Part shown: piece by piece, positions 14,995 to 64,000 of the stretch | How the letters are laid out: each line of letters begins with the position of its first letter | How positions within the stretch are numbered: position 1 is the stretch's first letter | IMG/VR virus record: IMGVR_UViG_3300027708_000012 | Location: 1-64,000 of that record | Length of the DNA stretch: 64,000 nucleotides | Direction: 5' to 3' (one strand) | The notes under the pieces: generated by a model | What the model saw: only the letters and a program-made list of their open reading frames with translations | The model's database searches: none | What the model was told of the DNA's origin: nothing | Translations under genes and position numbers: made by a program

Positions 14995-15023
14995 ATTATA
15001 GCATCTATTACGAGTTAGATCAA
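14995..15023 (-). promoter_or_regulatory. sigma70-type promoter for primase operon
   Basis: TTGATC-N17-TATAAT with TG-n on the - strand. Confidence 0.7.
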
Positions 15024-16129: not shown

Positions 16130-16155
16130 TTGGCAAGGACCTTTATAAAGTATTT

Positions 16156-19759: not shown

Positions 19760-19765
19760 AAATCC

Positions 19766-22425: not shown

Positions 22426-22468
22426 ATGATTTATTATACACTATTTTTTCTAAAAAGCAACCTCTTAG

Positions 22469-22500
22469 AAAAAAATAGGCCTTGTATTATTTAAGGCCTA
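22469..22500 (-). terminator. intrinsic terminator after uvsY
   Basis: TAGGCCTT/AAGGCCTA stem plus T-run on the - strand. Confidence 0.7.
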
Positions 22501-22524
22501 TAGTGGGTATTTTGAGTAAATTAG

Positions 22525-22980: not shown

Positions 22981-23210
22981 TAAAACTCCAGTTCTTGAGT
23001 ATCGTCGTAATCTTCGTCGTCGTTAAGATAATAATCAATAGCTTGATCTAATGATTCGTCTACACCTTTGGCATCTTTTAAAACTCGATCGCTTACTCCA
23101 AAATCTGCAAGCAAATCAATATAACGTTCTGCTACGGTCTCTAGTTGTTTCTTATCTAGATATTCAACAAAGTTTAACCAGATATCGCCTACTTGTGTTT
23201 CATTCAACAT
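22980..23210 (-). CDS. small acidic hypothetical protein
   Basis: 76 aa; coupled between uvsX and uvsY. Confidence 0.75.
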   Translation of the reverse strand: MLNETQVGDIWLNFVEYLDKKQLETVAERYIDLLADFGVSDRVLKDAKGVDESLDQAIDYYLNDDEDYDDTQELEF

Positions 23211-50052: not shown

Positions 50053-50182
50053 TTCATTCTCCGTGGTTCTATATTTATGCTTATATTAACGTCACTGTAC
50101 ATGTAATGATATGTGAAGTTAGCACAAGACTGCCCAGTATATTATCTATAGTGTATTTATGACGCTTGTGTATACGACTTAG

Positions 50183-51418: not shown

Positions 51419-51453
51419 ATTAATTGCTTACCTAATGTTGATCAGCCAATATT

Positions 51454-52743
51454 TTAAGATTCTGTTTGTAATATAGTAAGTGTTACAGTTATAACTGAAG
51501 CAGATGCTCCGTTATTATAAATTTTAAGAGGAATACTAGTTGTAGGTGTTGCTTCACTACTATATCCCACAATTGCTGGACTAAAATATTGTGTAGTTCC
51601 TGTTGTTGAAATCATTTCTGCAATGACTCCTGAACCAGGAGTTGGATCAGTAGTAATAGCTCTGGATGCATCTGAAGTTCTTGCTGCGGTACTAGAATAA
51701 ACAGTAACCCAGGCACCATATGAAGTTTGAATACTATACAACATATAGCCTTTATAGCCAGTTATGGTATAGTTGGCACTAGATCCTGCCGCAATACTAC
51801 TAGTTGTGACTGATACAGATGTTCTACTAGCAGCAACAACCGTTACAGTTTGCGTTACCCAACTTAAAGATCCAGAACCGTTAGTAGTTAATACTTGCCC
51901 AGCTGTTCCTCCAGTTATTGATAAATTTCCAACAGGACCTAAATTAGTGGATCCAGTAAACGTGGTTTGACTATTAAATGTTACTGCATTACCAAATGAT
52001 AAAGCACCGCTAAAAGTTGCTCCGGCACTGAATGTAATAGCAGAACTAAAAATTGCACTTGAATTAAAAGTTACTGAAGAACTAAATGTAGTTGACCCGC
52101 TTACAGTTCCGCCAGTGAACAGTGGAATAACAGGTGGAGTAAATGTAAAAACACCAGATAAGTTATTATAAGATAAACCACCGCTTCCGCTTGCGGTTGC
52201 TGTAGACACACTAAGAGCTGTTAGCTGAATTCCCGACACCGCATTGCCAACTAAGTCTGCAGAAGGTATCCATTTTCCTTGAGATGTACTATATTTTAAT
52301 ACTTGACCGTCTGAAGGGCTTGTAATATTAACATCGGTCAATCCTGATAATGTAGTTGAACCGTTAATTGTAGTGCCGCCGCCGCCGCTTACTGTTGCCC
52401 AACTTAAAACACCATTCCCGTCAGTAGTTAATACTTGACCAGCGGTTCCTCCGGCAATCGTAACATTACTAATCAATCCTAAATTAGTTGTTCCTGTGTT
52501 CGATAACGGGCCAGAAATTGTCAATCCAGTTAGTGTTCCAAGTATATTAACAACACTAGAACCCAGTGTGGTCTGAGATAGTAAAGTTTGTCCAGCTGTG
52601 GTTATTTTTGCTCCGGATACTAGTTCAATCCTATTACCAGCCACTGTTAAGGTTTGCGTAATAAGATTTCCCGAAACGTCTACTAAAAAATACGGACTAG
52701 TAAATCCAGAGTCTGATCTAAATAATTTTGAAATAACAGTCAT
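51454..52743 (-). CDS. tail fibre-like protein
   Basis: GGTAGQVLTT.G.G.LSW repeats; LSGLTDV; GQVLKY. Confidence 0.75.
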   Translation of the reverse strand: MTVISKLFRSDSGFTSPYFLVDVSGNLITQTLTVAGNRIELVSGAKITTAGQTLLSQTTLGSSVVNILGTLTGLTISGPLSNTGTTNLGLISNVTIAGGTAGQVLTTDGNGVLSWATVSGGGGTTINGSTTLSGLTDVNITSPSDGQVLKYSTSQGKWIPSADLVGNAVSGIQLTALSVSTATASGSGGLSYNNLSGVFTFTPPVIPLFTGGTVSGSTTFSSSVTFNSSAIFSSAITFSAGATFSGALSFGNAVTFNSQTTFTGSTNLGPVGNLSITGGTAGQVLTTNGSGSLSWVTQTVTVVAASRTSVSVTTSSIAAGSSANYTITGYKGYMLYSIQTSYGAWVTVYSSTAARTSDASRAITTDPTPGSGVIAEMISTTGTTQYFSPAIVGYSSEATPTTSIPLKIYNNGASASVITVTLTILQTES

Positions 52744-52758
52744 AGGTATACGATGCCT

Positions 52759-53442
52759 TTAAGCCAGGGCTACTGCAAATGCGGCTGCAATTTTTGTAGC
52801 ATATTGCACAGTTACTGCACTTGAATTACCTGCTGGTGCTGAAGACATCGACACTGAAGTAAATGTGCCGGGCGCAGGAGTGGTGCCACCAATTGCCACG
52901 TTGTTCATAGTCCCAGTAGCTGCACTTGTTATACTGATCACTCCGCTACCTGTTGTTGATAAACTGATATTATTTGCACCTGCTGCAAGTGTTACTTGGC
53001 CGCTTGTTGCTGACAAACTAGTAAACGCTCCGGACGCCGGGGTTGTTCCACCGATTGACATATTATTAATTGAACCGGTTGTTCCTGGATTAATAGTCAC
53101 CGATCCTGATCCGGTTGGAGAAATTGTAACACTGGCATTGGCTGGGCTAATTGAAACTGTAGAAGTTGCAGTTAATGTAGTAAAATTGCCAGGCTTTGGA
53201 GTTGATGCGCCAATAGTTACGTTATCTAATGTTCCAGCAACTGCTGGATTGATAAACACTGAGTTAGTAACCACAAGATTTGGTGTTGAAAAGTTGCTTT
53301 GTGACCCAATTGTCAGTGTATTAGTCAGCGGATTTGTTGAAATTGTAATACCGTTATTACCAACAACAGTTAATGTGTTGTTGGTAGCATTTAAGCTAAT
53401 TTGCGATTGGCTGGGCGAAGCAATGTATGTATATCCGTTCAT
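52759..53442 (-). CDS. fibre-associated structural protein
   Basis: G..NN..IGGTTP..G.FT repeats. Confidence 0.75.
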   Translation of the reverse strand: MNGYTYIASPSQSQISLNATNNTLTVVGNNGITISTNPLTNTLTIGSQSNFSTPNLVVTNSVFINPAVAGTLDNVTIGASTPKPGNFTTLTATSTVSISPANASVTISPTGSGSVTINPGTTGSINNMSIGGTTPASGAFTSLSATSGQVTLAAGANNISLSTTGSGVISITSAATGTMNNVAIGGTTPAPGTFTSVSMSSAPAGNSSAVTVQYATKIAAAFAVALA

Positions 53443-54632
53443 GCTGCTATTACTCCAAGTAATAATTTTGTTAAGTTACCTACTGTTATAAGACTAGTAG
53501 GAGTTGTTCCGGGATTGGTAATTTGTAAAGTAGTAAATGCACCACTTCTAGGTGTTGAGTTGCCTACTGTTATATTATTCATAGATCCGCGTGTACCAGA
53601 AGATGCACTAAATGTTGAACTACCAGTGGTTGATATTGTAAAATTTTGATTAGTCGAAACTAAACTTGTTGCATTGTTGGATGACAATGCGGTAAATGCC
53701 GCTGATTTTGCAGAGTTGGCACCTATTGTCATACTATTAATCGATCCTGTTGCACCGGATGACATTACCACAGCGCCTGTTCCTGTTGGAGATATTGTAA
53801 TCAACTGATTAACGCCAGTAGCAATTACAGTGCTGGATGACAGCGACGTAAACGTAGCTGGTTTTGCAACTAGAGATCCAATTGTGGTATTATCAATACT
53901 GGATGTACTAACAGCCGTTATGTTTATAGAATTATTAACAGTCAAGTTAGGAATGTTGCCCAACGTGGTAAATGTTATAGTATTTGTACTAGTATTAGTT
54001 GTAATACCAATACTGGTATCGGTATTTACAAAATTAATAGTGTCTAATATAAAACCTGCTGACAGGATTGCTTGCCCTGGTACTATTACTTGTGCAATAT
54101 TACTGAGAAATACACGGCCATAACTGTCAAGAGTTACACCAGGTAATGCGCTGCCAGTCCAATTAAGCCCAGTGCCTATTTGGCCTCCGGTACTGTCTGT
54201 TTCACCTGTGGTAGAATGTATTTCTAAGTTATTAACCCGCTGACTGTATGTTGCGTTTAGTACAAGATTGACACCTAATAATGGTGTAGTGCCGTTGGCA
54301 GCATAATACGGGCTTGCTATCAAATTCACTACTGAATTAGTAACTGTTGCAGTATATTGAACTAGATCTCTTCCTAAATTTGTGCGACCGTATACAGTTA
54401 TTGACGCTTGATCGTCCCTTGCAGATAGTAATATTTCTACATGTTCTATATCATCTTTACCGTATTCTACTGCTATTTTATAACTTGCACTTTTAAAGTC
54501 TTGGAGATACCAACTATCTATTACAGTATTTGGTGCAATAGAGAACATCTTTCCTTGGAAGGAAAATCCGGTCCTGTCTCTAAATTTTAGAGTATTACCC
54601 AGGCCTTTTATAAAATAATCAGTAAAATTCAT
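53439..54632 (-). CDS. fibre-associated structural protein
   Basis: The same I.N.TIG..TP..G.FT repeats; late box. Confidence 0.75.
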   Translation of the reverse strand: MNFTDYFIKGLGNTLKFRDRTGFSFQGKMFSIAPNTVIDSWYLQDFKSASYKIAVEYGKDDIEHVEILLSARDDQASITVYGRTNLGRDLVQYTATVTNSVVNLIASPYYAANGTTPLLGVNLVLNATYSQRVNNLEIHSTTGETDSTGGQIGTGLNWTGSALPGVTLDSYGRVFLSNIAQVIVPGQAILSAGFILDTINFVNTDTSIGITTNTSTNTITFTTLGNIPNLTVNNSINITAVSTSSIDNTTIGSLVAKPATFTSLSSSTVIATGVNQLITISPTGTGAVVMSSGATGSINSMTIGANSAKSAAFTALSSNNATSLVSTNQNFTISTTGSSTFSASSGTRGSMNNITVGNSTPRSGAFTTLQITNPGTTPTSLITVGNLTKLLLGVIAA

Positions 54633-54747: not shown

Positions 54748-55137
54748 ATGAGCAGACAAGAAGGCATGGTTACTAAAGGTTGGGGGTATGAGCTTATTTG
54801 GGCTACTAACGATCATTATTGCGGCAAAATAATGGTTTTTACAGATGCAGGGTCAAAATTTAGTATGCATTTTCACAAAGAAAAAACTGAAACTTGGTTT
54901 GTAAATTCAGGTAAATTTATTCTAAGATACATAGATACAACAAATGGTGCTTTAATTGAGCGCAATCTTGATCAAGGAGATGTGTGGCACAATAATCCTT
55001 TGCAACCACACCAATTAGAAGCACTATTGCCCGGGAGTACAATTCTAGAAGTTAGTACAGCAGATTCTGTAGAAGACAATTATAGAATTGTGCCCGGCGA
55101 TAGTCAGCTTACGCCCGAGTTGAAAAATCAAAGTTAA
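54748..55137 (+). CDS. cupin-domain protein (mannose-6-phosphate isomerase-like)
   Basis: KGWGYE, SMHFH..K.ETW, PHQL, EVST. Confidence 0.85.
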   Translation: MSRQEGMVTKGWGYELIWATNDHYCGKIMVFTDAGSKFSMHFHKEKTETWFVNSGKFILRYIDTTNGALIERNLDQGDVWHNNPLQPHQLEALLPGSTILEVSTADSVEDNYRIVPGDSQLTPELKNQS

Positions 55138-55690
55138 TAACTATTCTATAATCTTCTTCAGTCGGTGAAGAATCTGAATAATACTGAGCTCCGTCAAAAC
55201 AGACAAACCTGTTGGCTTTTGCTTCTACTTCTTTAGCTACTGTAGAGATACCGTTATATTTTTCCTTAAAACATCCATGACTAGCATCTTTAAAATCTTT
55301 GTATTTAGAAATATCTGTGTGAAAATCGTAAGTTTCGTTGAAGATTTTGGTAGATGCGGTCGAGTCTGTTAGATACAATATTGCCGATGTATGTGGAAAC
55401 GGAATATTGATAGTTGGATTATCTACATAAGGTTTATCAGTTTTAGTTTGCATAGTAACCTGTATCCTAAAAATCTCATCAACTTGCGCTCCGGTCTGTT
55501 CAACAGCTGCAAACAATAATGGTTCCAATGTACTGGCAAAGGGTGTATATTTTTGGCCGTTGTCTAAAGGTACATTTGTGAAAATAGCAGGTTTATTTTT
55601 ATTAAAGTTCCACGGAAATGAATGAAATTCCACAATGTCAGTAACCAGTTTAAACACCGATGATGAAAGTAAATTATCAATTATAATCAT
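55109..55690 (-). CDS. 2OG-Fe(II) oxygenase-fold protein lacking metal ligands
   Basis: Aligns with 17963-18490, but HNPHID becomes DNPTIN and KHASSSP becomes YYSDSSP. Confidence 0.7.
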   Translation of the reverse strand: MIIIDNLLSSSVFKLVTDIVEFHSFPWNFNKNKPAIFTNVPLDNGQKYTPFASTLEPLLFAAVEQTGAQVDEIFRIQVTMQTKTDKPYVDNPTINIPFPHTSAILYLTDSTASTKIFNETYDFHTDISKYKDFKDASHGCFKEKYNGISTVAKEVEAKANRFVCFDGAQYYSDSSPTEEDYRIVINFDFSTRA

Positions 55691-55700
55691 GTTATATCCT

Positions 55701-57185
55701 TTAGTTGTTTAAAATAGAGTCAACCCACTGTCTGTGATCTACAGGATTTTGGTGTACACTATTTTTTATTTGTTGATTTGTGTGAGATACTTGTTCAGCA
55801 TATTTTTGTAACCACTTAGTGGTTAAATATTTTTTTATATTTTCTTGATTATCATATTTTCCATGACCGTAAGCAATACAGTTAAAATTCATGGATGTAA
55901 ACATTTTTACATCTGAAGTAGATATACTATCAAAATTATTTAAATAACTTGTTGACATTTTTTCTTCTAAATCTAATAACCAGTCTGGTTTATTGTTGGT
56001 TAAATATCTCCAAAATTCAGAATCTGTTCTATTGGTATTATAAAAATGCCTTACATATTCAAAACTATTTGTATACACATCCTGAAGTACTTTATTGTAA
56101 GATCTACGATCCATTGGTAACGGACTAAAATTGTTAAGTTTGGTCATAATATCTAATTGAAGATATGTATGATGTAAACTAGTAGCCTCTAACGGCTCCA
56201 CAAACCCGCTGGCTAGTCCGATTGCAACACAATTTCCAATCCAAGATTCTTTAAAATAACCATTATTAAATTTAATAACTCTGTCTGATTGTAATTCAAC
56301 ATTGTGATTTTTTAATAACCATGCGTTAAAATCTATTTTAGCTTCTTCGTCGGTCATGAACTTACTTGAATAAACATAGCCAGTGCCTCGACGATTACTT
56401 AACGGAACATCTAATATCCAGCCATTTTTAGTAGCTTCAGCTGTTGTGTAGGGTGGAATATAATCATAATGTTTAAATATTGGGTTAGGAATTGTTCTAT
56501 CTGTGGGTAATTGTTCAGATATATCAATCCATTCGGGATTAAGTTGGCTAATCAATGCTCGTTGATATCCTGTACAATCTACAAATAAATCGGCTGTGAT
56601 AATTTCGCCAGTGTTTAATCTAATACTTTTAATATTATTATTTTCTACTTCAACGTTTTCTACAATAGCATCAATTGTTTTAATACGGTCTTTAAATTTT
56701 TTCTCAATATATCTTCCAACTAATGTAGCATCTACATGCAATGCATGACGATATAATAAATTATTAGCATCAGGAATTACATTATTTTCAAAATAAAATT
56801 TACTATAACCTTGTCCGCCATCATAAGTTCCATTAGCCATGTCGTAAGCGTCTAGTAAATTAAATTGTTGTGCTACTCTGTCAAGCCGATTCATGCATTC
56901 GTTAACAGGAAAATTATGAAACCACCAATGATCAGGTTTAGTCCAATTTTTAAATTTTAATCCTAATTTAATTGTAGCATTACAATGCTTAACTAATTCT
57001 ACTGTTGTAACTCCAACTCCCCTGAGGTAATTATCAAACATCATAGTAAGGCTTTCGCCAACGCCAATTCCTGGTTTACTATGATCGTAAATAGACACTA
57101 CTTCAACTAATTCGCCCCAATAACTTTTAAAATAAGTCGACGCCATTACTCCGGCTGTGCCTCCACCGATGACTACTATTTTCAT
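55701..57185 (-). CDS. tryptophan halogenase-like flavoprotein (variant motifs)
   Basis: GGGTAG, GVGES, NATIK, DCTG, WILDVP, FVEPLEATS. Confidence 0.85.
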   Translation of the reverse strand: MKIVVIGGGTAGVMASTYFKSYWGELVEVVSIYDHSKPGIGVGESLTMMFDNYLRGVGVTTVELVKHCNATIKLGLKFKNWTKPDHWWFHNFPVNECMNRLDRVAQQFNLLDAYDMANGTYDGGQGYSKFYFENNVIPDANNLLYRHALHVDATLVGRYIEKKFKDRIKTIDAIVENVEVENNNIKSIRLNTGEIITADLFVDCTGYQRALISQLNPEWIDISEQLPTDRTIPNPIFKHYDYIPPYTTAEATKNGWILDVPLSNRRGTGYVYSSKFMTDEEAKIDFNAWLLKNHNVELQSDRVIKFNNGYFKESWIGNCVAIGLASGFVEPLEATSLHHTYLQLDIMTKLNNFSPLPMDRRSYNKVLQDVYTNSFEYVRHFYNTNRTDSEFWRYLTNNKPDWLLDLEEKMSTSYLNNFDSISTSDVKMFTSMNFNCIAYGHGKYDNQENIKKYLTTKWLQKYAEQVSHTNQQIKNSVHQNPVDHRQWVDSILNN

Positions 57186-58654
57186 AATGTATTTTCTCTT
57201 ATAAATGTCAATGCTTTTTTATGTGATATAACTTCAGAATTATCAGCTTTATAGTATTCAGTAAGCTCGTCTATAATCCGATCAGCTCGATTTTTAATTT
57301 CCTGATCTTGGGAGTCAAATTCTTTTAATATTGAATCAATATTAAATAATTTTAAACCATGCAATACTAATAGAAAATGTAATTCTTTAAACAGCACGTA
57401 TCTGCTAAGTCCTGAAAAATCTTCTCGTATGGGCAACTTAGTTTTCCAAACATTCATTTTTTGTTTTAGACTTTCCGGTAAAGGTACATTAGAAATTTTT
57501 TGCCAAAAAGCTGTATCTTGTCTCGGTGTTACAAAATGTAAAACAATAAAATCTCGAATATTTTCTATAATGTCATTAAAAGATTTATTATAATTTGCTA
57601 TTACAGTCTCATTATAATTTACTAATTTATGCATTAACATAAATGTTTGCTGGATAGTGGTACCAATGCTAGAAGCTTCTAGAGGCTCCACAAAGCTACT
57701 ACTGAGCCCGATTGCACAACAATTATTAATCCATGCTCGGTCCACGGAACCTGGGTCAAACTTAATATGTTTACCTAACGTAATCGGTGTTCCTAGAAAT
57801 TCTTCTACCTCTTGTTGGGCTTGTTCTGGAGTTAAGAACTCATCATCATAAATGTATCCGTTACCCCAACGACCGTATGTTGGAGTGCTGAACATCCACC
57901 CATATTTCATTGCTTGAGATAACGACCACATGTTATAGTTGTCTGTGTCAGACGTTTGAAATACAATTGCTGAATTAGTTTTTAAATACTTGCTATGGCT
58001 TATCCACTTTGCACCCATTTTAGAAATTAATATTTTTTTAAAGCCAGTACTATCTATATAAAAATTGCTTTTATAAGTAGAAGTAGTGCTAGCAATATAA
58101 TCTATTTCGCCAGCTTCATTTAAAATAACATCAGTTATTTCATCGTTGATAATTTCAATTCCTTTATCTGTAGCAATTTTAGATAAAAATTCATTTAACT
58201 TAAAAGTATTAAAATGGTATTGCGCCACTGGGGACTGGTTTTCTTTCAGGTAACGTGAATTTAATTTATTTTTCCAGAATGACTCTCCAGATAATTTACT
58301 AGATTCAAATCCTTGTGAAATTAACCTGCCGTAGATGTACGGGTATTCGCCCACTAGTTCATCGTATCCATTTTGAATGCTGTGCATATAATCAGGAACA
58401 CCCCAGTCTTTAAATACAATTCCAATTTTAAATGTTGCATCTGTTTGTTTAATCATGTCTGCAAGATTTATTCCTACAAAAGAAGCAAACTCGTGCCAGT
58501 GTTCAGTTGATCCTTCCCCTACTCCAATTATACCAATTTTTTTAGAGCAAATTATTGAAATATTATAATCTGGAAATCGTGTTTTTAAAATCAAAGCAGA
58601 AATCAACCCGGCAGTTCCGCTGCCGACTACATTGATTTTAAATTTTTCATTCAT
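57182..58654 (-). CDS. tryptophan halogenase-like flavoprotein (variant motifs)
   Basis: GSGTAG, GVGEGS, DATFK, DSTG, WMFSTP, FVEPLEASS. Confidence 0.85.
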   Translation of the reverse strand: MNEKFKINVVGSGTAGLISALILKTRFPDYNISIICSKKIGIIGVGEGSTEHWHEFASFVGINLADMIKQTDATFKIGIVFKDWGVPDYMHSIQNGYDELVGEYPYIYGRLISQGFESSKLSGESFWKNKLNSRYLKENQSPVAQYHFNTFKLNEFLSKIATDKGIEIINDEITDVILNEAGEIDYIASTTSTYKSNFYIDSTGFKKILISKMGAKWISHSKYLKTNSAIVFQTSDTDNYNMWSLSQAMKYGWMFSTPTYGRWGNGYIYDDEFLTPEQAQQEVEEFLGTPITLGKHIKFDPGSVDRAWINNCCAIGLSSSFVEPLEASSIGTTIQQTFMLMHKLVNYNETVIANYNKSFNDIIENIRDFIVLHFVTPRQDTAFWQKISNVPLPESLKQKMNVWKTKLPIREDFSGLSRYVLFKELHFLLVLHGLKLFNIDSILKEFDSQDQEIKNRADRIIDELTEYYKADNSEVISHKKALTFIRENTL

Positions 58655-58748
58655 CTTGATTTCCTGATTTTTGTATGCTATTATATAGTCATAACCTAGT
58701 AGGGTGCATAAAATTTATGATAATTACTTTACTAGAAAGGCAATCAAG

Positions 58749-60344
58749 ATGAGAACAAAAATCGACAAAATAGTTGTATTAGGAGGAGGATCTGCTGGTT
58801 GGATGACTGCCTCTACGCTTATTAATTTTTTTCCTGAAAGAGAAATTGTCGTAATCGAAAGTCCCGATATGCCTATTGTGGGCGTGGGAGAAAGCACTCT
58901 AGGAACTATAAGACATTGGATGTATTCACTAGGAATTGATGAAAAAGATTTCATGAAATACACTAATGCTTCTTACAAAATGAGTATTAAGTTTACTGAT
59001 TTTTATGAAAAAGATGCAGGATCTTTTCATTACCCGTTTGGAGCTCCAGTTTTAACAGATGCGCCAAACGGACTTCAGGAGTGGCAAGCTAAACGTGCGC
59101 TTTATCCAGATACACCTGTTGAAGATTATTGTAGAACTTATCTTTCTAACATGCCGTTAATCGAGTCTAATAAATTTAGTAAAAACGAGCATGGACTATT
59201 TGATGAGTATCGTCCAGAAATGCATGTTGCATATCACTTTGATGCGGTATTATTTGGTCGATGGCTTAAAGAAAGTTACAGTTTACCTAAGGGTGTAAAA
59301 TTAATTACAGGCACAGTTACTGATGTTTCAACATCTGAAATTGGTATTGATAAATTAACATTATCTGACGGAACAGAAGTTACTGCAGATTTATTTGTAG
59401 ATTGTACTGGCTGGAAAAGCATGTTGCTAGCAGGTGCATTGAAAGAACCGTTTAAATCTTATGCAGACATCTTGCCAAGTAATCGAGCATGGGCATGCCA
59501 GGTTCCGTATGTTGATAAGGAAAAAGAACTTGAACCGTATACTAACTGTACCGCAATTGGTCACGGTTGGTGCTGGAATATTCCATTATGGACTAGACTA
59601 GGAACAGGTTATGTATACAGCGATAACTTTATTTCTCCAGAAGATGCTAAAGAAGAATTTAAACAATATCTAATGAGTGATAAAATGGCTGTTCCTCGAA
59701 CACAGGAGCAAGTAGATACTTTAGAGTTTAGAGATATTCCTATGCGAGTTGGAATACACGAACGTACTTGGGTTAAAAATGTGGTGGCAATAGGGTTGAG
59801 TGCTGGATTTATTGAACCGTTAGAAAGTAATGGATTATATTCAGTACATGAATTTTTGTTATCTTTAGTATCTGTTTTACAAAGAACACATATTACCCAA
59901 TGGGATAGAGACGTTTATAATTCACAAGTCGGTGGTACATTTAATACATTTGCTGAATTTGTTTCTCTTCATTATGCATTGAGTATCAGAGACGATACTA
60001 ATTTCTGGGATAACATAACGTCAAAAACGTTTTGCCCAGGAATAGTAGACATGTCAATTAAAAGTACAAGTAATACTTTTTTTGATTTAGCCTGGAGGAA
60101 ACTTGCTGTTTTTAGGCATAACGAGCAGGGCGGTTTACAATATGTTGCAACAGGTATGCATTTTCATATAATGAGTAAATTGCAGTTATTGTATGCCGAG
60201 AGAGCGTTTAGGCAAAATCCCAAGAACGAAGTCAACGAATTTGTACGCAAACGTGCAATACTTCAAAAAAAATGGCAACGTGCAGCTGAATTGTGCCCTA
60301 GTTTATATCAATATTTAAAGGATAATGTACACAATGACGAGTGA
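58749..60344 (+). CDS. flavin-dependent (tryptophan-type) halogenase
   Basis: Start reassigned to 58749 (SD GAAAGG); GGGSAG, GVGEST, NASYK, WCWNIP, FIEPLESNG. Confidence 0.9.
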   Translation: MRTKIDKIVVLGGGSAGWMTASTLINFFPEREIVVIESPDMPIVGVGESTLGTIRHWMYSLGIDEKDFMKYTNASYKMSIKFTDFYEKDAGSFHYPFGAPVLTDAPNGLQEWQAKRALYPDTPVEDYCRTYLSNMPLIESNKFSKNEHGLFDEYRPEMHVAYHFDAVLFGRWLKESYSLPKGVKLITGTVTDVSTSEIGIDKLTLSDGTEVTADLFVDCTGWKSMLLAGALKEPFKSYADILPSNRAWACQVPYVDKEKELEPYTNCTAIGHGWCWNIPLWTRLGTGYVYSDNFISPEDAKEEFKQYLMSDKMAVPRTQEQVDTLEFRDIPMRVGIHERTWVKNVVAIGLSAGFIEPLESNGLYSVHEFLLSLVSVLQRTHITQWDRDVYNSQVGGTFNTFAEFVSLHYALSIRDDTNFWDNITSKTFCPGIVDMSIKSTSNTFFDLAWRKLAVFRHNEQGGLQYVATGMHFHIMSKLQLLYAERAFRQNPKNEVNEFVRKRAILQKKWQRAAELCPSLYQYLKDNVHNDE

Positions 60345-60942
60345 AATCTATCCGTTATTTTCTAAACCTGTTTTTATATGCAACGAATATCTTGACAGAA
60401 AAAGATTTGATGCTGAGATTGACTATGTTAAAAATCTAGAATTTAGAACAAACGAAAACGGAAATTTGGCTAGTTTAGATACAGATATTTTAGAAAATAA
60501 AGAATTATGTGAAATTAAAAAAATTGTTGAATTTGCAATTAATGAATACACAAAAAAGATTATGTTTTGGGATGAAAATACATTTTATATAACTCAGTCT
60601 TGGGCAAATATTACTAAACCATCAACTAGTCACCATAAGCATTATCACTTTAATAGTTTAATCAGCGGAGTATTTTATCTAAGTACAATTAAAGAAGATA
60701 ACATTGTATTTTTTACCGATGATAAAAAGACTATTAGTTTAGAAAGCAGTAATTATGGAATATTTAACTCGACTAGTTTTAAAATTGCGATTAATAATAA
60801 TTCAGTAGTAGTATTTCCGTCTTCTCTTATACATGGTGTCGAAGTTAATAACACAGATGAAGAAAGAATTAGCATTGCGTTCAATGTATTTGTTAAAGGT
60901 GCATTAGGCTCAAAAGAAAAATTAACATATTTAGAAATATAA
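60334..60942 (+). CDS. TIGR02466-type 2OG-Fe(II) oxygenase
   Basis: SWAN, H.H.H.NS.ISGVFYL, FPS.L.H.V..N, RISIAFN. Confidence 0.85.
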   Translation: MTSEIYPLFSKPVFICNEYLDRKRFDAEIDYVKNLEFRTNENGNLASLDTDILENKELCEIKKIVEFAINEYTKKIMFWDENTFYITQSWANITKPSTSHHKHYHFNSLISGVFYLSTIKEDNIVFFTDDKKTISLESSNYGIFNSTSFKIAINNNSVVVFPSSLIHGVEVNNTDEERISIAFNVFVKGALGSKEKLTYLEI

Positions 60943-60946
60943 AATT

Positions 60947-61882
60947 ATGAAAAGAAATACAGCATTTTTTATTAACGGTGGTGCAGGAAGAATTATATGT
61001 TCAATTCCTGCGTTTGAACTGTACGAAAAAGAAAATCCGGATGACGATTTTATTATTATTATCGAGTATGGTATTGATCTCTTTAAGGGACATCCTACAT
61101 TATTCAAAAGATGCTATGACTATGCTCATAGAAATTTATTTCGAGACAAGTTAGTAGATATGAATTTTGTGTCGCCAGAGCCATACCAAGTCTGGGAATA
61201 TTATAATCAAAAAGCTAGTATTTCTCAAGCATTTGATTTGCTAATAAACAAAAAAGATCTCAGATATCTCCCTCCTCCTAAGCTAGTATTAAGCAATGAA
61301 GAATTGTTTGGCGGTATTGAAACTTTGAATACCGTCAAAAAAGAAAGTAAAAATAAGAAAGTTGTAATTTTTCAGCCTTTTGGTCGAGGATCTAATCTGA
61401 CTAAGGAGCAAACTACTCCTGATATTTACGGTAAATCTTTTATTATGGACGATGTTATATCAATAGTGCAAAAATTAGAAAAAAAATATACAGTAGTTGT
61501 CATGAGTGAAAATGCTATAGATTTTAAAAATATTTGTGGTCAGGATTTTAATCAAATCACAAATATTAACTTACGCAAATGGTTTGGATTAATAAACGCA
61601 GCTGATTATTTTTTAGGATGTGATAGTGTAGGACAGCATATTGCATATGCCCTTTCTAAACCTGCCACCGTGGTGCTTGGTTCGACATTTAAAGAAAATG
61701 TATCGTATCCTGGATGCGATAGATTTGATATAATTGATTTTGGTGAAAATCGAAGAATGTACAGTCCTATTCGTATGTCTCTTGACGAAGTAGCAGATTC
61801 AAATAATGAAAGCATGATGAGAGTTACTCCTGATCAAATCGAAACCGTAATTAATTCTGTTGTTAAAAATATATCCAAATGA
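60947..61882 (+). CDS. glycosyltransferase family 9-like protein
   Basis: GGAGRIIC..PA, FQPFG, FLGCDSVGQHIA.AL.KP..V..G. Confidence 0.7.
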   Translation: MKRNTAFFINGGAGRIICSIPAFELYEKENPDDDFIIIIEYGIDLFKGHPTLFKRCYDYAHRNLFRDKLVDMNFVSPEPYQVWEYYNQKASISQAFDLLINKKDLRYLPPPKLVLSNEELFGGIETLNTVKKESKNKKVVIFQPFGRGSNLTKEQTTPDIYGKSFIMDDVISIVQKLEKKYTVVVMSENAIDFKNICGQDFNQITNINLRKWFGLINAADYFLGCDSVGQHIAYALSKPATVVLGSTFKENVSYPGCDRFDIIDFGENRRMYSPIRMSLDEVADSNNESMMRVTPDQIETVINSVVKNISK

Positions 61883-62493
61883 TTAAACAATCTACTCTTT
61901 ATCCATTATTTCCTACTATAGTTTATAAGAGCTCATTAGGTAGAGAATTAACATCATCCGAGGTTACTGAAATTTATTCTACCGAGGTTCTTGAACAAGG
62001 ATTAGGCAATGATATATCTAACAATAGTTGGATACTTGATAACCCTATATTTTCAAATTTAAAAAACGAGTTAATGTTACACGTACATTCTTATATGAAA
62101 GAGTTAATGAAAATTGAAGTAGATCTGTACATGACTAATTCTTGGATTAATGTTACTGGTTTTCAAAAACAACATTCTGCGCACAGTCATACTAACAGTA
62201 TATTATCGGGTGTGTATTATTTTAAAACTAGCGATAGTCAACCAAGTATATCATTTAATCGATTAACTCCGCCATTTTTCTTAAACATGAAATCTACTGA
62301 ATATACACCTGCTAATTCTATTGAATGGACAGTACCGGTTGAAGACGGTGAGATTATTATATTTCCTAGTACTTGTTTTCATTATGTAAAACCAAACTTA
62401 ACACAGAATGAAAGAATTAGCATTGCATTTAATACATTTGCACGAGGAACGATTGGTTCTGAAGTTCCAGGCGCAGATTTAGAATTAAAATAA
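61879..62493 (+). CDS. TIGR02466-type 2OG-Fe(II) oxygenase
   Basis: SWIN, HSAHSHTNSILSGVYY, FPS..FHYV.PN, RISIAFN. Confidence 0.85.
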   Translation: MIKQSTLYPLFPTIVYKSSLGRELTSSEVTEIYSTEVLEQGLGNDISNNSWILDNPIFSNLKNELMLHVHSYMKELMKIEVDLYMTNSWINVTGFQKQHSAHSHTNSILSGVYYFKTSDSQPSISFNRLTPPFFLNMKSTEYTPANSIEWTVPVEDGEIIIFPSTCFHYVKPNLTQNERISIAFNTFARGTIGSEVPGADLELK

Positions 62494-62500
62494 GGTTATT

Positions 62501-64000
62501 ATGAAAAAAACATCGTGGATTGCAGGAGTTACTCGAGGGCATAATGCTAGTGTATGCTTGCTCAAAGACGGAGAAATAGTATTTTCTATCGAAGAAGAAA
62601 GACTAAGTCGTAAAAAATACGACGGCGGCCCGTTTGCTGCAATGTTAAAAATACTTGATTATACAGATAAATTAGATTATATTGTAATTGCACATACACA
62701 AAGTTTAAAAGACACTGCTGGTAAAATTGATTTTACAGGCGATGACGTTTATACAGGCCTAGCACGTAAACTAGGATTAATTGATCGTAAAGCAGACATT
62801 TATAATCATCCACAAGTTATTGATTTAAGTCATATACATCATAAATTGCATGCAGCGTGTGCATTTTATCGATCTGGATTTACTGAAGCAGTTGCAGTAA
62901 TTGTTGATGGCGCTGGAACTTTTATTCCATTGAATCTAGGTAATGAAAATGTAACTGGATGGGAAACTGAAAGTATATACACTTGTAATTATCCAAGTAA
63001 ATTTAGTACGCTTTATAAGCATATTGGTGTACGTGGGCCGGCACCCGGTTACTTAATTCAAGATTTTGATAGCGGTTTGTACGATGAGCCGGGTAAGACG
63101 CATCACGCTTTAATTACAGATCGAGCAGGCATTACTAAAACATACGAAGCTGTAACTCAATATTGCGGTTGGAGTCCTATTGAAGCTGGTAAAACTATGG
63201 GGTTATTTCCTTATGGTAAAGATAATCCTGCAATACCTCCACTTTTTGATGATACAAGTATAGCACCTCTTGCTAATAGAAATATTGTAGTACCAACATA
63301 CCCTAACGGTGCATTGATTAATACTGGATTATTTGAATTTTTAGATCAACATAATAATGATGATTTGACAATGCTAGAAAATCGAAGAGATCTTGCATAT
63401 GCTTGCCAGACACAAACACAATCTCAAGTTGTTAAATTAATTCAACAAGCCGTAGATATAAGCGGACATAAAAATGTTGTGTTAAGCGGCGGGTATGGAT
63501 TAAATTGTGTTGCTAATTATCATTACCTACAAGCTCTTAAAGACAACGGTATTAATTTCTATGTAGAACCTATTAGTAATGATGCTGGTACCGCTATTGG
63601 AGCAGCTCTAATGCATTGGCATTCATTAACAGGAAATCGTACTCCAGCAAAACATGATACATTGTATTTAGGCCCAGCTCATAGTTACACAACGGAACAA
63701 GTTATCGATATATCAATGCAACATGATGTTGAAATACAAGATGCTACTTATAGTGATATTGTAGAGTTATTAACTAAGAAAAACATTGTCACATTATTCC
63801 AAGGCTCTAGCGAAAACGGGCCACGGGCATTAGGAAATAGAAGTGTATTATTTGATCCACGGTTTGAAGATGGAAAAGATTTTGTTAATGGTGTAAAACA
63901 TCGTGAATATTTCCGACCATTTGCTGGTAGTATTTTAGCAGAATATGCTAAAGAGTGGTTTGATTTACGTGGCATGGAAGACAGTCCTTTTATGATGTAT
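62501..64000 (+). CDS. carbamoyltransferase (NodU/CmcH/TobZ family), two-domain, truncated by window end
   Basis: Not in the ORF track because no stop falls in the window; GHNASV...EEERLSRKK, HHKLHA, VDGAG, GGYGLNCVAN, NDAGTAIGA, GPRALGNRS, REYFRPFA. Confidence 0.92.
   Translation, partial: MKKTSWIAGVTRGHNASVCLLKDGEIVFSIEEERLSRKKYDGGPFAAMLKILDYTDKLDYIVIAHTQSLKDTAGKIDFTGDDVYTGLARKLGLIDRKADIYNHPQVIDLSHIHHKLHAACAFYRSGFTEAVAVIVDGAGTFIPLNLGNENVTGWETESIYTCNYPSKFSTLYKHIGVRGPAPGYLIQDFDSGLYDEPGKTHHALITDRAGITKTYEAVTQYCGWSPIEAGKTMGLFPYGKDNPAIPPLFDDTSIAPLANRNIVVPTYPNGALINTGLFEFLDQHNNDDLTMLENRRDLAYACQTQTQSQVVKLIQQAVDISGHKNVVLSGGYGLNCVANYHYLQALKDNGINFYVEPISNDAGTAIGAALMHWHSLTGNRTPAKHDTLYLGPAHSYTTEQVIDISMQHDVEIQDATYSDIVELLTKKNIVTLFQGSSENGPRALGNRSVLFDPRFEDGKDFVNGVKHREYFRPFAGSILAEYAKEWFDLRGMEDSPFMMY

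What the first reader, a model, noticed from the sequence alone, without database searches (positions are those of the whole stretch)
54748..64000. Tailoring-enzyme island next to fibre genes: a possible phage biosynthetic or modification pathway
Cupin sugar isomerase-like, three flavin halogenase-like, three 2OG-oxygenase-fold, one GT9-like and one two-domain carbamoyltransferase genes are contiguous and partly translationally coupled. These chemistries (halogenation, hydroxylation, glycosylation, O-carbamoylation) usually decorate a shared scaffold, and no scaffold synthase is in the window. Candidate substrates are virion fibres, host surface glycans (superinfection exclusion) or DNA bases. 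Such genes are known individually from cyanophage hypervariable regions, but their joint product is not known to me.
Basis: partly seen in the sequence, partly recalled or inferred. Interest (0 to 1): 0.6.

Follow-up and report, generated by a model that had tools for sequence, protein, structure and literature searches.

The report
Cyanophage fibre-side sugar and halogenase island
A large freshwater T4-like cyanophage carries, between its tail-fibre genes, a conserved operon of a heptose-type sugar transferase, a carbamoyl-adding enzyme, halogenases and oxygenases; such islands have been known in cyanophages since 2005-2010, their product is still unknown, and the gene order points to decoration of the fibres.

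Summary
All the named domains are present, contiguous and partly overlapping.

Corrections:
- The island runs past the window end, to base 65475 of a 345-kb freshwater phage genome.
- It contains a fourth, short halogenase-like gene.
- The third "2OG" gene (55109-55690) has lost its metal- and 2OG-binding residues.

This is a variant of a known feature of T4-like cyanophages. Tandem dioxygenase and halogenase arrays were described by Iyer 2010. The so-called LPS clusters were described by Sullivan 2005 and 2010.

New here:
- The GT9-fold gene G and carbamoyltransferase I form a near-invariant pair. I lies within 2 kb downstream of G in 44 of 45 loci.
- The pair sits in a fixed slot of the fibre gene array, often just after a fibre-assembly chaperone.
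- In 18 loci ADP-heptose genes plus the cupin accompany the pair.
- In this phage's clade the pair is embedded in a conserved five-gene block: VirX1-like halogenase, oxygenase, G, oxygenase, carbamoyltransferase. The other genes shuffle.

Best reading (about 0.37): a late-expressed system that heptosylates and carbamoylates fibre proteins, with added hydroxylation or halogenation.

Rivals: host-envelope remodelling, a small halogenated metabolite, or no joint product. DNA modification is unlikely, because the genome has no hydroxymethylase or TET gene.

The parts
45112..54632 (-). Left flank: block of five fibre-type genes (1646 aa; S8 subtilase-like 411 aa; 429 aa; 227 aa; 397 aa).
   Evidence: phrog tail-fibre hits for 51454-52743 and a Peptidase_S8 hit for 50183-51418. 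The 429-, 227- and 397-aa products are 28-33% Ser+Thr and carry repeats. The 227- and 397-aa products match genes that sit next to G and I in relatives.
54748..55137 (+). A: small metal-type cupin (129 aa); family T4-GC307, labelled 'cysteine dioxygenase' in PHROGs.
   Evidence: Cupin_2 E=1e-4 (below cut-off) and phrog_7851 E=2e-35. The HxHxxxE...H cupin motif is visible in the PDB alignment. In 18/18 relatives' loci that hold it, four ADP-heptose-pathway genes are also present.
55109..55690 (-). B: degenerate P4H-like 2OG-oxygenase paralogue (193 aa), probably catalytically dead.
   Evidence: No Pfam or PDB sequence hit. phrog_274, labelled 'endonuclease V', E=3e-26. An iterated profile links it to 2OG-FeII_Oxy_3/5 proteins. 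Against a 79%-identical homologue, H, D, H and R are replaced by T, N, Y and Y.
55701..57185 (-). C: flavin-dependent halogenase paralogue (494 aa).
   Evidence: Trp_halogenase 1.4e-84. GxGxxG, the Lys of the NA(S/T)xK motif and the EP(L/M)E Glu are kept, while WxWxIP is degenerate (GWILDVP). It forms its own orthogroup with 100/99 support.
57182..58654 (-). D: flavin-dependent halogenase paralogue (490 aa); its stop overlaps the start of C by 4 nt.
   Evidence: Trp_halogenase 3.1e-84. Motifs as for C, with GWMFSTP in place of WxWxIP. Own orthogroup with 100/100 support. Lake-population variants fall at third codon positions in 7 of 8 cases.
58749..60344 (+). E: VirX1-type flavin-dependent halogenase (531 aa from ATG 58749; the ORF is open from GTG 58704).
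   Evidence: Trp_halogenase 9e-107. PDB 6qgm VirX1 E=2e-99 over the whole length. Full GxGxxG, Lys and GWCWNIP motifs. Clusters with Syn9 gp41/gp42 and Sf-CH11.
60325..60942 (+). F: PF13759/TIGR02466 2OG-Fe(II)-oxygenase-fold protein (205 aa); overlaps E by 20 nt.
   Evidence: 2OG-FeII_Oxy_5 1.2e-19 and TIGR02466 8e-17. Invariant HxH...H and a near-invariant Arg across 22 homologues.
60947..61882 (+). G: GT-B, GT9-fold glycosyltransferase, putative heptosyltransferase (311 aa; T4-GC302, phrog_8954).
   Evidence: AF2 pLDDT 86. Foldseek TibC 6e-11, WaaF and WaaC. VIA Z 23.0/20.9/19.3/17.7 against 11.5 for the next fold. Invariant CDSxGxH. Nearest ESM Atlas clusters are 100% viral. 4510 metagenomic clusters, some named ADP-heptose:LPS heptosyltransferase by JGI.
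61879..62493 (+). H: second PF13759/TIGR02466 oxygenase-fold protein (204 aa); overlaps G by 4 nt.
   Evidence: 2OG-FeII_Oxy_5 6.5e-21 and TIGR02466 2e-22, above its cut-off. AF2 pLDDT 85.5 with a DSBH fold. Nearest structures are the uncharacterised 3bvc/2rg4, then PolD, PHD2/P4H, SnoK/SnoN and HygX.
62501..64000 (+). I: two-domain NodU/CmcH/TobZ-type O-carbamoyltransferase, cut by the window end (full gene 62501-64291, 596 aa). It is followed outside the window by J, a short halogenase-like gene (64291-65475), and by more fibre genes (65522-81905, minus strand).
   Evidence: Carbam_trans_N 6e-25 and Carbam_trans_C 2e-57 on the full protein. PDB 7xb6 2e-58, GdmN, a novobiocin carbamoyltransferase and TobZ. 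70% mean column identity over 29 phages, with invariant H113/H114/H117/D136. The right flank holds a Phage_tail_APC chaperone, a He_PIG+Gly_rich protein and two giant CBM_5_12 proteins.

Best explanation
**Shown**
- The island fills a fixed slot in the tail-fibre gene array of a T4-like cyanophage.
- Its ancient core is a pair: a GT9-fold glycosyltransferase (G) and a two-domain O-carbamoyltransferase (I).
- In this phage's clade the pair is embedded in a conserved five-gene operon: VirX1-type halogenase, PF13759 oxygenase, G, PF13759 oxygenase, I.
- Three further halogenase paralogues, a cupin and a dead oxygenase are mobile accessories.
- The phage carries a kinase, an adenylyltransferase and an epimerase of the ADP-heptose type elsewhere in its genome.

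**Inferred mechanism**
1. Late in infection the phage makes ADP-heptose.
2. G transfers heptose in the cytoplasm onto Ser/Thr-rich fibre proteins encoded on either side. This would resemble the way autotransporter heptosyltransferases treat beta-helical adhesins.
3. I then O-carbamoylates the sugar, using carbamoyl phosphate and ATP. This would resemble WapO acting on the inner-core heptose of Pseudomonas.
4. The two PF13759 oxygenases that bracket G oxidise either the sugar or the acceptor residue.
5. The halogenases add halogen, or possibly hydroxyl, to aromatic side chains or to an aromatic aglycone.

The net effect would be a chemically decorated receptor-binding apparatus. Possible benefits are altered adsorption, stability, or resistance to proteases and grazers.
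For: - **Domains and folds:**
- **G-I pairing:** I lies within 2 kb downstream of G on the same strand in 44/45 loci, and within 3 kb in 45/45.
- **Position in the fibre array:** the usual order is giant fibre, M, Gly-rich paralogues, fibre-assembly chaperone, G, I, then an f17/f16 fibre or heptose genes. A chaperone lies directly upstream in at least 29/44 loci, and M lies within 6 kb in 26/35.
- **Same layout in cultured phages:** S-SSM7 has G and I together with HldE-like, GmhA and epimerase genes.
- **Heptose link:** heptose genes and the cupin co-occur 18/18. The phage's own kinase, adenylyltransferase and epimerase lie at 261.0-263.0 kb.
- **Halogenases and oxygenases by fibre genes elsewhere:** in Syn9 and S-RIM44 they follow fibre and fibre-assembly genes.
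- **Block conservation:** E-F-G-H-I is conserved in 7 relatives' loci.
- **Old paralogues:** there are four deep halogenase orthogroups, each retained.
- **Purifying selection in lakes:** 35/40 population variants fall at third codon positions, p=2e-12.
- **Possible transcription:** identical contigs occur in a lake metatranscriptome. This is weak evidence, because DNA carry-over is not excluded.
- **Precedents:** heptose 7-O-carbamoylation by WapO (PMC8005017). VirX1 has an unusually large, open active site and no known natural substrate (PMC8407142). Tail-collar and collagen-like proteins were earlier predicted to be substrates of neighbouring 2OG dioxygenases (PMC2938197).
Against: - No modified virion protein has been observed; the acceptor is inferred from gene position only.
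- By Z-score G is closer to the LPS enzymes (WaaF 20.9, WaaC 19.3) than to the protein heptosyltransferase TibC (17.7). The fold therefore does not favour a protein acceptor.
- GmhA-type (SIS) and GmhB-type (HAD) genes were not found in this genome.
- Halogenases occur away from fibre genes in some phages: S-B64, and this genome's second copy at 308 kb.
- C, D and J lack the second Trp of WxWxIP.
- The habitat is a freshwater lake, where bromide and iodide are scarce.
- The accessory genes shuffle, as expected of a hypervariable slot.
- The G+I complex prediction gave no answer.
Confidence: 0.37

Rival explanations
1. Host-envelope remodelling. G, I and the heptose genes add carbamoyl-heptose to the host's LPS or another surface glycan during infection. 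This would block superinfection or stop progeny re-adsorbing to debris. It is the classical 'LPS gene cluster' reading of cyanophage islands.
For: G's closest solved structures are LPS heptosyltransferases and a GT9 protein. JGI names family members ADP-heptose:LPS heptosyltransferase. Heptose plus carbamoyl is exactly the chemistry of the Pseudomonas inner core (PMC8005017). The hypothesis is published for P-SSM2, S-SSM7 and S-SM2 (PMC1079782, PMC3037559, PMC2984593).
Against: The G-I pair sits inside the fibre operon, directly after the fibre-assembly chaperone, across many lineages. It is not placed with early or host-takeover genes. G's nearest ESM Atlas clusters are all viral, and all 11 hits in MAGs show phage gene order. 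G's N-terminal acceptor half is not recognised by GT9 sequence models. No membrane or flippase partners were seen. From my own knowledge, marine picocyanobacterial LPS lacks heptose and Kdo, so the canonical acceptor would be missing; the host of this freshwater phage is unknown.
Confidence: 0.2
2. Small-molecule pathway. The halogenases, oxygenases, GT and carbamoyltransferase tailor an amino-acid-derived or aromatic metabolite supplied by the host, giving a halogenated, hydroxylated, glycosylated and carbamoylated natural product. This is the Iyer et al. 2010 proposal for Syn9.
For: The same enzyme set decorates aminocoumarins, ansamycins and glycopeptides. I's best PDB matches include GdmN, a novobiocin carbamoyltransferase and TobZ. 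H's structural neighbours include SnoK/SnoN, HygX and PolD. VirX1 halogenates many free aromatics in vitro (PMC8407142). The prediction is published in PMC2938197. Elsewhere the genome holds an AMP-binding enzyme with BKACE, SDR, radical-SAM, methyl- and sulfotransferase genes.
Against: No condensation domain is in the genome, and no adenylation gene is in the island. There is no room for a precursor-peptide ORF, since intergenic gaps are at most 116 bp. No export or immunity gene is present. The fixed position within fibre genes is unexplained. A lytic phage gains little from an antibiotic-like product.
Confidence: 0.15
3. No joint product. The slot between fibre genes and the neck genes is a hypervariable landing site where unrelated auxiliary genes accumulate. 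Only G+I (with the heptose genes) act together. The halogenases and oxygenases act independently, for example in 2OG/N-stress modulation or repair.
For: A, B, C, D and J change place, orientation and copy number among relatives. B is inactivated here. Halogenases and carbamoyltransferases occur at other genome sites. Sullivan 2010 raises the idea of 'stuffer DNA' and a 2OG-modulation role (PMC3037559). The region corresponds to the known hyperplastic part of the structural module (PMC2984593).
Against: The order E-F-G-H-I, with overlapping stops and starts, is kept in 7 relatives' loci at only 42-67% identity for E, F, G and H. Halogenase-oxygenase adjacency recurs in Syn9, S-RIM44, Sf-CH11 and S-SSM7. 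There is strong purifying selection.
Confidence: 0.2
4. DNA base hypermodification. The carbamoyltransferase (with the GT and oxygenases) modifies hydroxymethylated pyrimidines in phage DNA, as in 5-carbamoyloxymethylcytosine phages.
For: A phage enzyme with the same two Pfam domains carbamoylates 5hmC in DNA and in 5hmdCTP (PMC8670742). The genome encodes two such enzymes.
Against: That activity co-occurs with a thymidylate-synthase-type hydroxymethylase. This genome has no PF00303 match and no Tet_JBP match; the Tet_JBP control did not ring, so that negative is weak. In unmodified contigs of that study the carbamoyltransferases were flanked by glycosyltransferases, as here. The island lies among fibre genes, not nucleotide-metabolism genes.
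Confidence: 0.04

Closest known systems
Tandem dioxygenase and tryptophan-halogenase neighbourhood of Synechococcus phage Syn9, also S-RIM44 and Sf-CH11 (Iyer et al. 2010, PMC2938197)
   Same: T4-like cyanophage. Several flavin halogenases and several distantly related 2OG dioxygenases lie in one co-directional array right after the tail-fibre and fibre-assembly genes. E clusters with Syn9 gp41/gp42.
   Different: Syn9 has 10 dioxygenases and 2 halogenases, but no GT9-like gene or carbamoyltransferase in the part of the array fetched here. In this phage the halogenase and oxygenases are interleaved with G and I in one operon. There are four halogenase orthogroups, and the host habitat is freshwater.
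'LPS' gene clusters of S-SSM7, P-SSM2 and S-SM2, with T4-GC302/303/304/305/307/308 (Sullivan 2005 and 2010; PMC1079782, PMC3037559)
   Same: S-SSM7 gp120 (44% identical to G) is followed by carbamoyltransferase gp121 (64% identical to I). The cluster also holds 2OG oxygenases, a halogenase, the cupin and ADP-heptose genes, and lies between the fibre genes and gp13.
   Different: In this genome the heptose genes lie 200 kb away (261-263 kb). GmhA and GmhB were not found. There are more halogenases. The 2OG genes bracketing G are of the PF13759 type.
VirX1, the iodinating flavin-dependent halogenase of cyanophage Syn10 (PDB 6QGM)
   Same: E aligns end to end with it (2e-99) and has the same length. 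GxGxxG, the catalytic Lys and WxWxIP are all present.
   Different: The best BLAST identity of E to the phage records that hold this type (Syn9, Syn10) is about 35%. The halide preference and natural substrate of E are untested, and VirX1's own natural substrate is unknown (PMC8407142).
Heptosyltransferases WaaC/WaaF with carbamoyltransferase WapO in the Pseudomonas LPS inner core
   Same: A GT9 fold plus a carbamoyltransferase as functional neighbours. The product there is 7-O-carbamoyl-heptose (PMC8005017).
   Different: G fails the GT9 sequence cut-offs. Its acceptor half is unrelated in sequence. The context is a phage fibre operon, not a waa cluster. Homology of I to WapO was not tested.
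Autotransporter heptosyltransferases TibC/AAH (PDB 4RAP, 4RB4)
   Same: Top Foldseek match of G (6e-11). These are cytoplasmic enzymes that O-heptosylate Ser in repetitive beta-helical adhesins, a working analogy for fibre decoration.
   Different: The VIA Z-score is lower than for WaaC/WaaF (17.7 against 19-23). TibC is about 80 residues longer. From memory it has an iron-finger and forms a dodecamer; neither feature was tested here.
Phage 5-hydroxymethylcytosine carbamoyltransferase (Yang et al. 2021, PMC8670742)
   Same: A phage-encoded enzyme with the same Carbam_trans_N and Carbam_trans_C architecture.
   Different: It is defined by co-occurrence with a dCMP hydroxymethylase, which is absent here. 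No direct sequence comparison was made.

Membership tests
Flavin-dependent (tryptophan-type) halogenases, PF04820 | Pfam model above its gathering score | tested here: met
   C 285 bits, D 284, E 358 and J 108 bits, against a cut-off of 21.
Flavin-dependent (tryptophan-type) halogenases, PF04820 | GxGxxG flavin-binding motif and the catalytic Lys (PrnA/RebH K79 equivalent) | tested here: met
   G27, G29, G32 and K92 (E numbering) are invariant in all five paralogues of the genome. In E the Lys aligns with the NATYK Lys of VirX1 and Th-Hal.
Flavin-dependent (tryptophan-type) halogenases, PF04820 | WxWxIP motif that separates halogenases from flavin monooxygenases | tested here: inconclusive
   E has GWCWNIP. 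C has GWILDVP, D has GWMFSTP and J has GWMFQIP, so only the first Trp and the Pro are kept. Monooxygenase chemistry is therefore not excluded for C, D and J.
Flavin-dependent (tryptophan-type) halogenases, PF04820 | Halogenating activity and a halide preference | not testable with these tools
   This needs an enzyme assay.
Glycosyltransferase family 9 (heptosyltransferases) | Sequence model above its cut-off | tested here: not met
   PF01075 gives 16.9 bits against a cut-off of 22. The RfaQ and heptosyltransferase III models score about 20 bits against 467 and 170. All hits cover only residues about 193-281.
Glycosyltransferase family 9 (heptosyltransferases) | GT-B fold closest to GT9 structures | tested here: met
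   VIA Z is 23.0 (3tov), 20.9 (WaaF), 19.3 (WaaC) and 17.7 (TibC), over 251-278 aligned residues. The next family scores 11.5.
Glycosyltransferase family 9 (heptosyltransferases) | Donor-site D-(S/T)-G-x-x-H motif in the C-terminal domain (motif recalled from memory) | tested here: met
   C225-D226-S227-x-G229-Q230-H231 is invariant or nearly so in 29 homologues. It lies in the stretch matched by the GT9 models.
Glycosyltransferase family 9 (heptosyltransferases) | Use of ADP-heptose as donor | not testable with these tools
   The support is indirect only. ADP-heptose-type genes sit next to G-I in 18 loci, and such genes are present in this genome.
NodU/CmcH/TobZ O-carbamoyltransferases | Kae1-like N domain plus YrdC-like C domain, both above cut-off | tested here: met
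   Carbam_trans_N 88.9 bits (cut-off 24) and Carbam_trans_C 193.6 bits (cut-off 27). PDB hits are TobZ, GdmN and 7xb6.
NodU/CmcH/TobZ O-carbamoyltransferases | Metal-binding His/His/Asp of the Kae1-like domain (TobZ residues recalled from memory) | tested here: inconclusive
   H113, H114, H117, D136 and D361 are invariant in 29 homologues. They were not mapped onto a structure here.
2OG-Fe(II) oxygenases, PF13759/TIGR02466 | Model above cut-off and a DSBH fold | tested here: met
   PF13759 gives F 71 and H 75 bits (cut-off 27). TIGR02466 gives H 80 bits, above its 62.5 cut-off, and F 61.7, just below. The H model has a DSBH fold.
2OG-Fe(II) oxygenases, PF13759/TIGR02466 | Canonical HxD/E...H iron triad and the 2OG-binding Arg | tested here: inconclusive
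   The invariant residues are H102-x-H104, H168 and R179. The position two residues after H104 is Asn or Asp. Which residues bind the metal was not resolved.
P4H-like 2OG oxygenases (for gene B) | HxD...H triad and Arg | tested here: not met
   B has T, N, Y and Y where its 79%-identical homologue P0002 and the orthologues in L012 and L013 have H, D, H and R.
Cyanomyovirus dioxygenase-halogenase neighbourhood (Iyer 2010) | Several distinct 2OG dioxygenases plus at least one Trp-halogenase homologue in one array of a T4-like cyanophage | tested here: met
   The gene content is shown. T4-like structural genes (sheath, tube, terminase, gp13-15 kin) are shown. The best phage matches are Kyanoviridae.
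5hmC-carbamoyl DNA hypermodification system | Co-encoded thymidylate-synthase-type dCMP hydroxymethylase, or a TET/JBP oxygenase | tested here: not met
   There is no PF00303 match although the controls rang. There is no PF12851 match, but its controls did not ring.

The most novel reading that the evidence does not exclude
The receptor-binding fibres of a widespread group of cyanophages are enzymatically heptosylated and O-carbamoylated. In this freshwater clade they are also halogenated or hydroxylated on aromatic residues by four dedicated flavoenzymes. That would be the first halogenated virion protein and the first natural substrate for the VirX1 family.
Probability: 0.1. Interest if true: 0.85.

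Novelty: new variant of a known kind. Interest (0 to 1): 0.45.

Why it matters
Tryptophan-halogenase, 2OG-oxygenase and carbamoyltransferase genes are among the commonest unexplained 'auxiliary' genes of ocean and lake cyanophages. Halogenases occur in 20/153 cyanophage genomes and 2OG oxygenases in 76/153 (PMC10452541). The G family alone has 4510 protein clusters in metagenomes. After about 15-20 years no natural substrate is known for these genes.

Three results turn a vague 'AMG island' into a concrete, cheap test on phages already in culture. First, the GT9-like gene and the carbamoyltransferase form a near-invariant pair. Second, the pair sits in a fixed slot among the fibre genes. Third, it is tied to phage ADP-heptose genes. 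The test is to look for carbamoyl-heptose, and for halogen, on virion fibre proteins.

If confirmed, it would add enzymatic decoration of the adsorption apparatus to the ways cyanophages tune host range and particle survival. It would also give the biocatalyst VirX1 a biological role.

Tried and rejected
- **Megablast against 50,697 phage records:** no match for the island. Relatives were only found at protein level.
- **PDB sequence searches:** nothing for B or G.
- **Word search for B:** only 2 proteins found.
- **T4 late-promoter word TATAAATA:** 2 matches in the window, both away from the island and fewer than chance (mean 8). No timing inference was made.
- **GmhA (SIS_2) and GmhB-type HAD:** not found in the genome.
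- **Flavin reductase:** not found.
- **Condensation domain:** not found.
- **Scan of 185,579 species genomes with the G profile:** 11 contigs, all with phage fibre synteny, so most likely phage DNA binned into MAGs. No cellular context was obtained.
- **Complex prediction of G with I:** no answer, score 0.00. This is not evidence either way.
- **Fold of G:** does not separate a protein acceptor from an LPS acceptor. TibC is first by Foldseek, but WaaF and WaaC score higher by Z.
- **Fold of H:** does not separate protein hydroxylases (PHD2, P4H) from sugar-acting oxygenases (SnoK/N, HygX, PolD).
- **Collagen-like Gly-X-Y runs in fibre proteins:** found only in the Gly-rich tail of the 598-aa protein, so there is no clear prolyl-hydroxylase target.
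- **Not done:**
  - Direct comparison of I with the published 5hmC carbamoyltransferase or with WapO, because those sequences were available only as typed text or not at all.
  - Mapping of TobZ specificity residues.
  - Folds of B and J (structure cap reached).
- **'Endonuclease V' reading of B:** rejected, and PMC2938197.

Full report
**What the window is**

The window is the first 64 kb of a 345,369-bp IMG/VR virus record with a CheckV completeness of 94%.

- PHROG hits identify a replicative helicase, a large terminase, a tail tube, a 1230-aa tail sheath, a sheath stabiliser and virion proteins.
- The best protein matches of the island genes are T4-like cyanophages of the Kyanoviridae: S-SSM7, Sf-CH11, Syn9, S-RIM44 and P-SSM2.
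- Nearly identical DNA occurs in runs from ten sequencing studies, most labelled freshwater or lake-water metagenome.
- An independent 31.5-kb IMG/VR contig is 100% identical over the island and both flanks.

So this is a real, recurrent freshwater jumbo relative of the cyanomyoviruses. The host was not determined.

**Check of the observation**

| Gene | Coordinates | Product |
|---|---|---|
| A | 54748-55137 + | cupin |
| B | 55109-55690 - | degenerate 2OG paralogue |
| C | 55701-57185 - | halogenase |
| D | 57182-58654 - | halogenase |
| E | 58749-60344 + | VirX1-type halogenase |
| F | 60325-60942 + | PF13759 oxygenase |
| G | 60947-61882 + | GT9-like |
| H | 61879-62493 + | PF13759 oxygenase |
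| I | 62501 onward + | carbamoyltransferase |

- Stops and starts overlap or nearly touch (D/C, E/F, G/H, I/J), so translational coupling is plausible.
- The island does not end at 64000. I runs to 64291 and is followed, with a 1-nt overlap, by J (64291-65475), a 394-aa halogenase-like protein that lacks the C-terminal domain.
- After J come a Phage_tail_APC fibre-assembly chaperone (K), a He_PIG/Gly-rich protein (L), a small fibre-like protein (M), and two giant proteins of 2609 and 1893 aa with CBM_5_12 repeats.
- With the fibre-type genes at 45112-54632 on the left, fibre genes flank the island on both sides.

**The individual enzymes**

*Halogenases.*
- E matches VirX1 (PDB 6qgm) over its whole length at 2e-99. 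It keeps GxGxxG, the catalytic Lys and WxWxIP.
- C, D, J and a fifth paralogue at 308 kb keep GxGxxG, the Lys and the EP(L/M)E Glu, but they have lost the second Trp of WxWxIP.
- A maximum-likelihood tree gives four deep orthogroups (E, C, D and J types). Each has 99-100% support and each is retained in relatives. They are old, maintained paralogues rather than recent copies.

*The glycosyltransferase G.*
- G fails the GT9 sequence cut-offs. Its AF2 model (pLDDT 86) is nevertheless a GT-B fold.
- Its nearest neighbours by a wide margin are GT9 enzymes: Z 23.0, 20.9 and 19.3, TibC 17.7, and the next fold 11.5.
- Its C-terminal half keeps an invariant CDSxGxH donor-site motif.

*The carbamoyltransferase I.* I is a full TobZ/NodU-type two-domain enzyme with invariant His/His/Asp candidates.

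*The PF13759 oxygenases F and H.*
- Both are PF13759/TIGR02466 DSBH proteins with invariant HxH...H...R.
- Their nearest solved relatives are uncharacterised. The next neighbours include both protein prolyl hydroxylases and sugar-acting oxygenases.

*The degenerate gene B.*
- B belongs to the family that RefSeq and PHROGs label 'DNA endonuclease V'. An iterated profile joins that family to 2OG-FeII_Oxy_3/5 proteins.
- Iyer et al. list ten tandem dioxygenases in that Syn9 array and name gp52 and gp54 as classical 2OG dioxygenases (PMC2938197). RefSeq annotates gp52 there as 'minor coat protein' and its neighbours gp51 and gp53 as 'DNA endonuclease V'.
- In this genome B has T, N, Y and Y where a 79%-identical homologue has H, D, H and R. 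B is probably inactive here.

*The cupin A.* A keeps the HxHxxxE...H cupin metal motif.

**Does the gene content travel together?**

I fetched 40 IMG/VR loci with G as query and 11 contigs from species genomes. All 11 of the latter show phage fibre synteny and are probably mis-binned phage DNA.

Counts:
- I lies within 2 kb downstream of G on the same strand in 44 of 45 loci with enough sequence, and within 3 kb in 45 of 45.
- A fibre-assembly chaperone lies directly upstream of G in at least 29 of 44 loci.
- M lies within 6 kb in 26 of 35 loci.

The usual gene order is giant fibre, M, two to five Gly/Cys/Trp-rich paralogues, chaperone, G, (one gene), I. After I comes either a small fibre gene, a fibre gene and a giant fibre, or a set of ADP-heptose genes.

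In 18 loci the neighbourhood holds four ADP-heptose-pathway genes. The set comprises a PfkB kinase, an adenylyltransferase, an epimerase, a HAD phosphatase and/or GmhA. The cupin A is present in exactly those 18 loci. S-SSM7 shows the same arrangement in a cultured phage.

In this genome the kinase, adenylyltransferase and epimerase lie at 261.0-263.0 kb. GmhA and a HAD phosphatase were not found.

Seven relatives' loci (L012-L018) keep the exact block E-F-G-H-I. Identities to this phage are 63-67% for E, 42-47% for F, 57-60% for G, 47-57% for H and 67-89% for I. In those loci A, B, C, D and J, along with further oxygenases, move, invert or change in number.

**Selection and expression**

Lake-population variants laid on 58100-63999 fall at third codon positions in 35 of 40 listed sites (G 21/22; binomial p=2e-12). 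This indicates purifying selection.

A lake metatranscriptome holds identical contigs over parts of D, E, F/G, G and I. Because these are contigs and DNA carry-over is possible, this is only weak evidence of transcription.

**How it most likely works**

The G-I pair, its tie to ADP-heptose genes, and the precedent of heptose 7-O-carbamoylation by WapO next to WaaC/WaaF in Pseudomonas (PMC8005017) make 'heptosyl transfer followed by O-carbamoylation' the most economical chemistry for the core.

The acceptor is not shown. I favour fibre proteins, at about 0.37, for four reasons:
- The pair sits inside the fibre operon, directly after the chaperone of the distal fibre, in many lineages.
- The enzymes and their sugar donor are cytoplasmic, as the fibre proteins are before assembly.
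- The three smaller left-flank fibre proteins (429, 227 and 397 aa) are 28-33% Ser+Thr and repetitive.
- Cytoplasmic heptosylation of repetitive adhesins is an established mechanism (TibC).

In this clade the oxygenases that bracket G and the co-operonic VirX1-type halogenase would add further marks. VirX1 has an unusually open active site and no known natural substrate (PMC8407142).

Points against:
- No modified protein is known.
- G is structurally nearer to the LPS enzymes than to TibC.
- Halogenases also occur away from fibres.
- Freshwater is poor in bromide and iodide.
- The accessory genes shuffle.

**Rivals**

- **Host-envelope remodelling (0.2)** is the published 'LPS cluster' idea (PMC1079782, PMC3037559, PMC2984593).
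- **A halogenated, hydroxylated small molecule (0.15)** is Iyer's proposal (PMC2938197).
  - It fits the natural-product relatives of I and H.
  - It lacks a scaffold synthase, a precursor ORF and an export gene.
- **No joint product beyond G+I (0.2)** fits the shuffling and the dead B, but not the conserved five-gene block.
- **DNA hypermodification (0.04)** has a real precedent (PMC8670742). Its required partner, a thymidylate-synthase-type hydroxymethylase, is absent, and no Tet_JBP match was found.

**Novelty**

The kind of island has been known since 2005-2010. VirX1-type halogenases, cyanophage carbamoyltransferases and 2OG oxygenases are all annotated in many cultured phages.

New in this analysis:
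1. The near-invariant G-I pair and its fixed slot in the fibre array.
2. The fold-level assignment of the widespread T4-GC302/phrog_8954 family to GT9, and its link to the phage ADP-heptose genes and the cupin.
3. A freshwater clade in which halogenase and PF13759 oxygenases are fused into the G-I operon.
4. The inactivation of B in this genome.

I rate it a new variant of a known kind with moderate interest. Its main value is a concrete, inexpensive test on phages already in culture.

- Read laying was given 5900 letters.
- No alternative genetic code was used.

Noticed in passing
Genome 308178-311659 (L008:8178-11659, minus strand), outside the window: A second co-directional, overlapping operon: carbamoyltransferase (544 aa), NifU-like scaffold, short halogenase-like protein (381 aa), IscA-like Fe-S protein, then a cell-wall hydrolase. 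[quoted passage not shown] The link to Fe-S assembly proteins is unexplained.
   Followed up: partly
Genome 261.0-267.6 kb (L051:7013-13586), outside the window: NAD-epimerase, PfkB kinase and cytidylyl/adenylyltransferase genes (ADP-heptose type) are followed by a tandem array of about five 2OG-oxygenase-fold genes (PF13759, PF13640, and the so-called 'denV' family).
   Followed up: partly
Genome about 219-227 kb (L068:7767-15059), outside the window: Another tailoring island. It holds a beta-keto acid cleavage enzyme, an SDR, a stand-alone AMP-binding enzyme, two radical-SAM proteins, DUF6492, a methyltransferase and a sulfotransferase.
   Followed up: no
Genome 255957-257027 (L051:1957-3027, minus strand): A 356-aa protein with an Mtd_N (major tropism determinant N-terminal) domain, E=4e-11. 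It may be the target of a diversity-generating retroelement. No reverse transcriptase was looked for.
   Followed up: no
Window 1-12000 compared with 12000-24000: A marked composition shift. GC is 0.45-0.48 with positive GC skew in the first 12 kb, then 0.34-0.39 in the next 12 kb. The island itself has GC 0.31-0.35.
   Followed up: no
Window 35496-39188 (minus strand): The tail-sheath protein is 1230 aa (phrog_10581, E=1.5e-216), which looks long for a T4-like sheath (from memory; not compared here).
   Followed up: no
Window 50183-51418 (minus strand): A subtilase (Peptidase_S8)-like protein of 411 aa is embedded between fibre genes. It may be a fibre-maturation or enzymatic fibre component.
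   Followed up: no
Genome 68358-81905 (L007:6358-19905, minus strand): Two giant fibre-like proteins (2609 and 1893 aa) each carry 5-6 CBM_5_12 carbohydrate-binding repeats.
   Followed up: no
L052-L062 (species-genome collection): Eleven contigs filed in MAGs of Chitinophagales, Methanobacteriota, Neomarinimicrobiota (one contig of 335 kb), Actinomycetota, Crocinitomicaceae, Flavobacterium and Yoonia carry the cyanophage fibre/G/I gene order. They look like phage DNA binned into cellular MAGs.
   Followed up: partly
L063 (Syn9 gp51, gp53, gp46, gp52), L065 (S-RIM44), L009 (S-SSM7 gp124): The RefSeq/PHROG labels 'DNA endonuclease V' and 'minor coat protein' inside these arrays appear to be misnomers for 2OG-dioxygenase-fold proteins (profile links; Iyer 2010).
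   Followed up: partly
L055: One relative has two G paralogues flanking the carbamoyltransferase (G-I-G).
   Followed up: no
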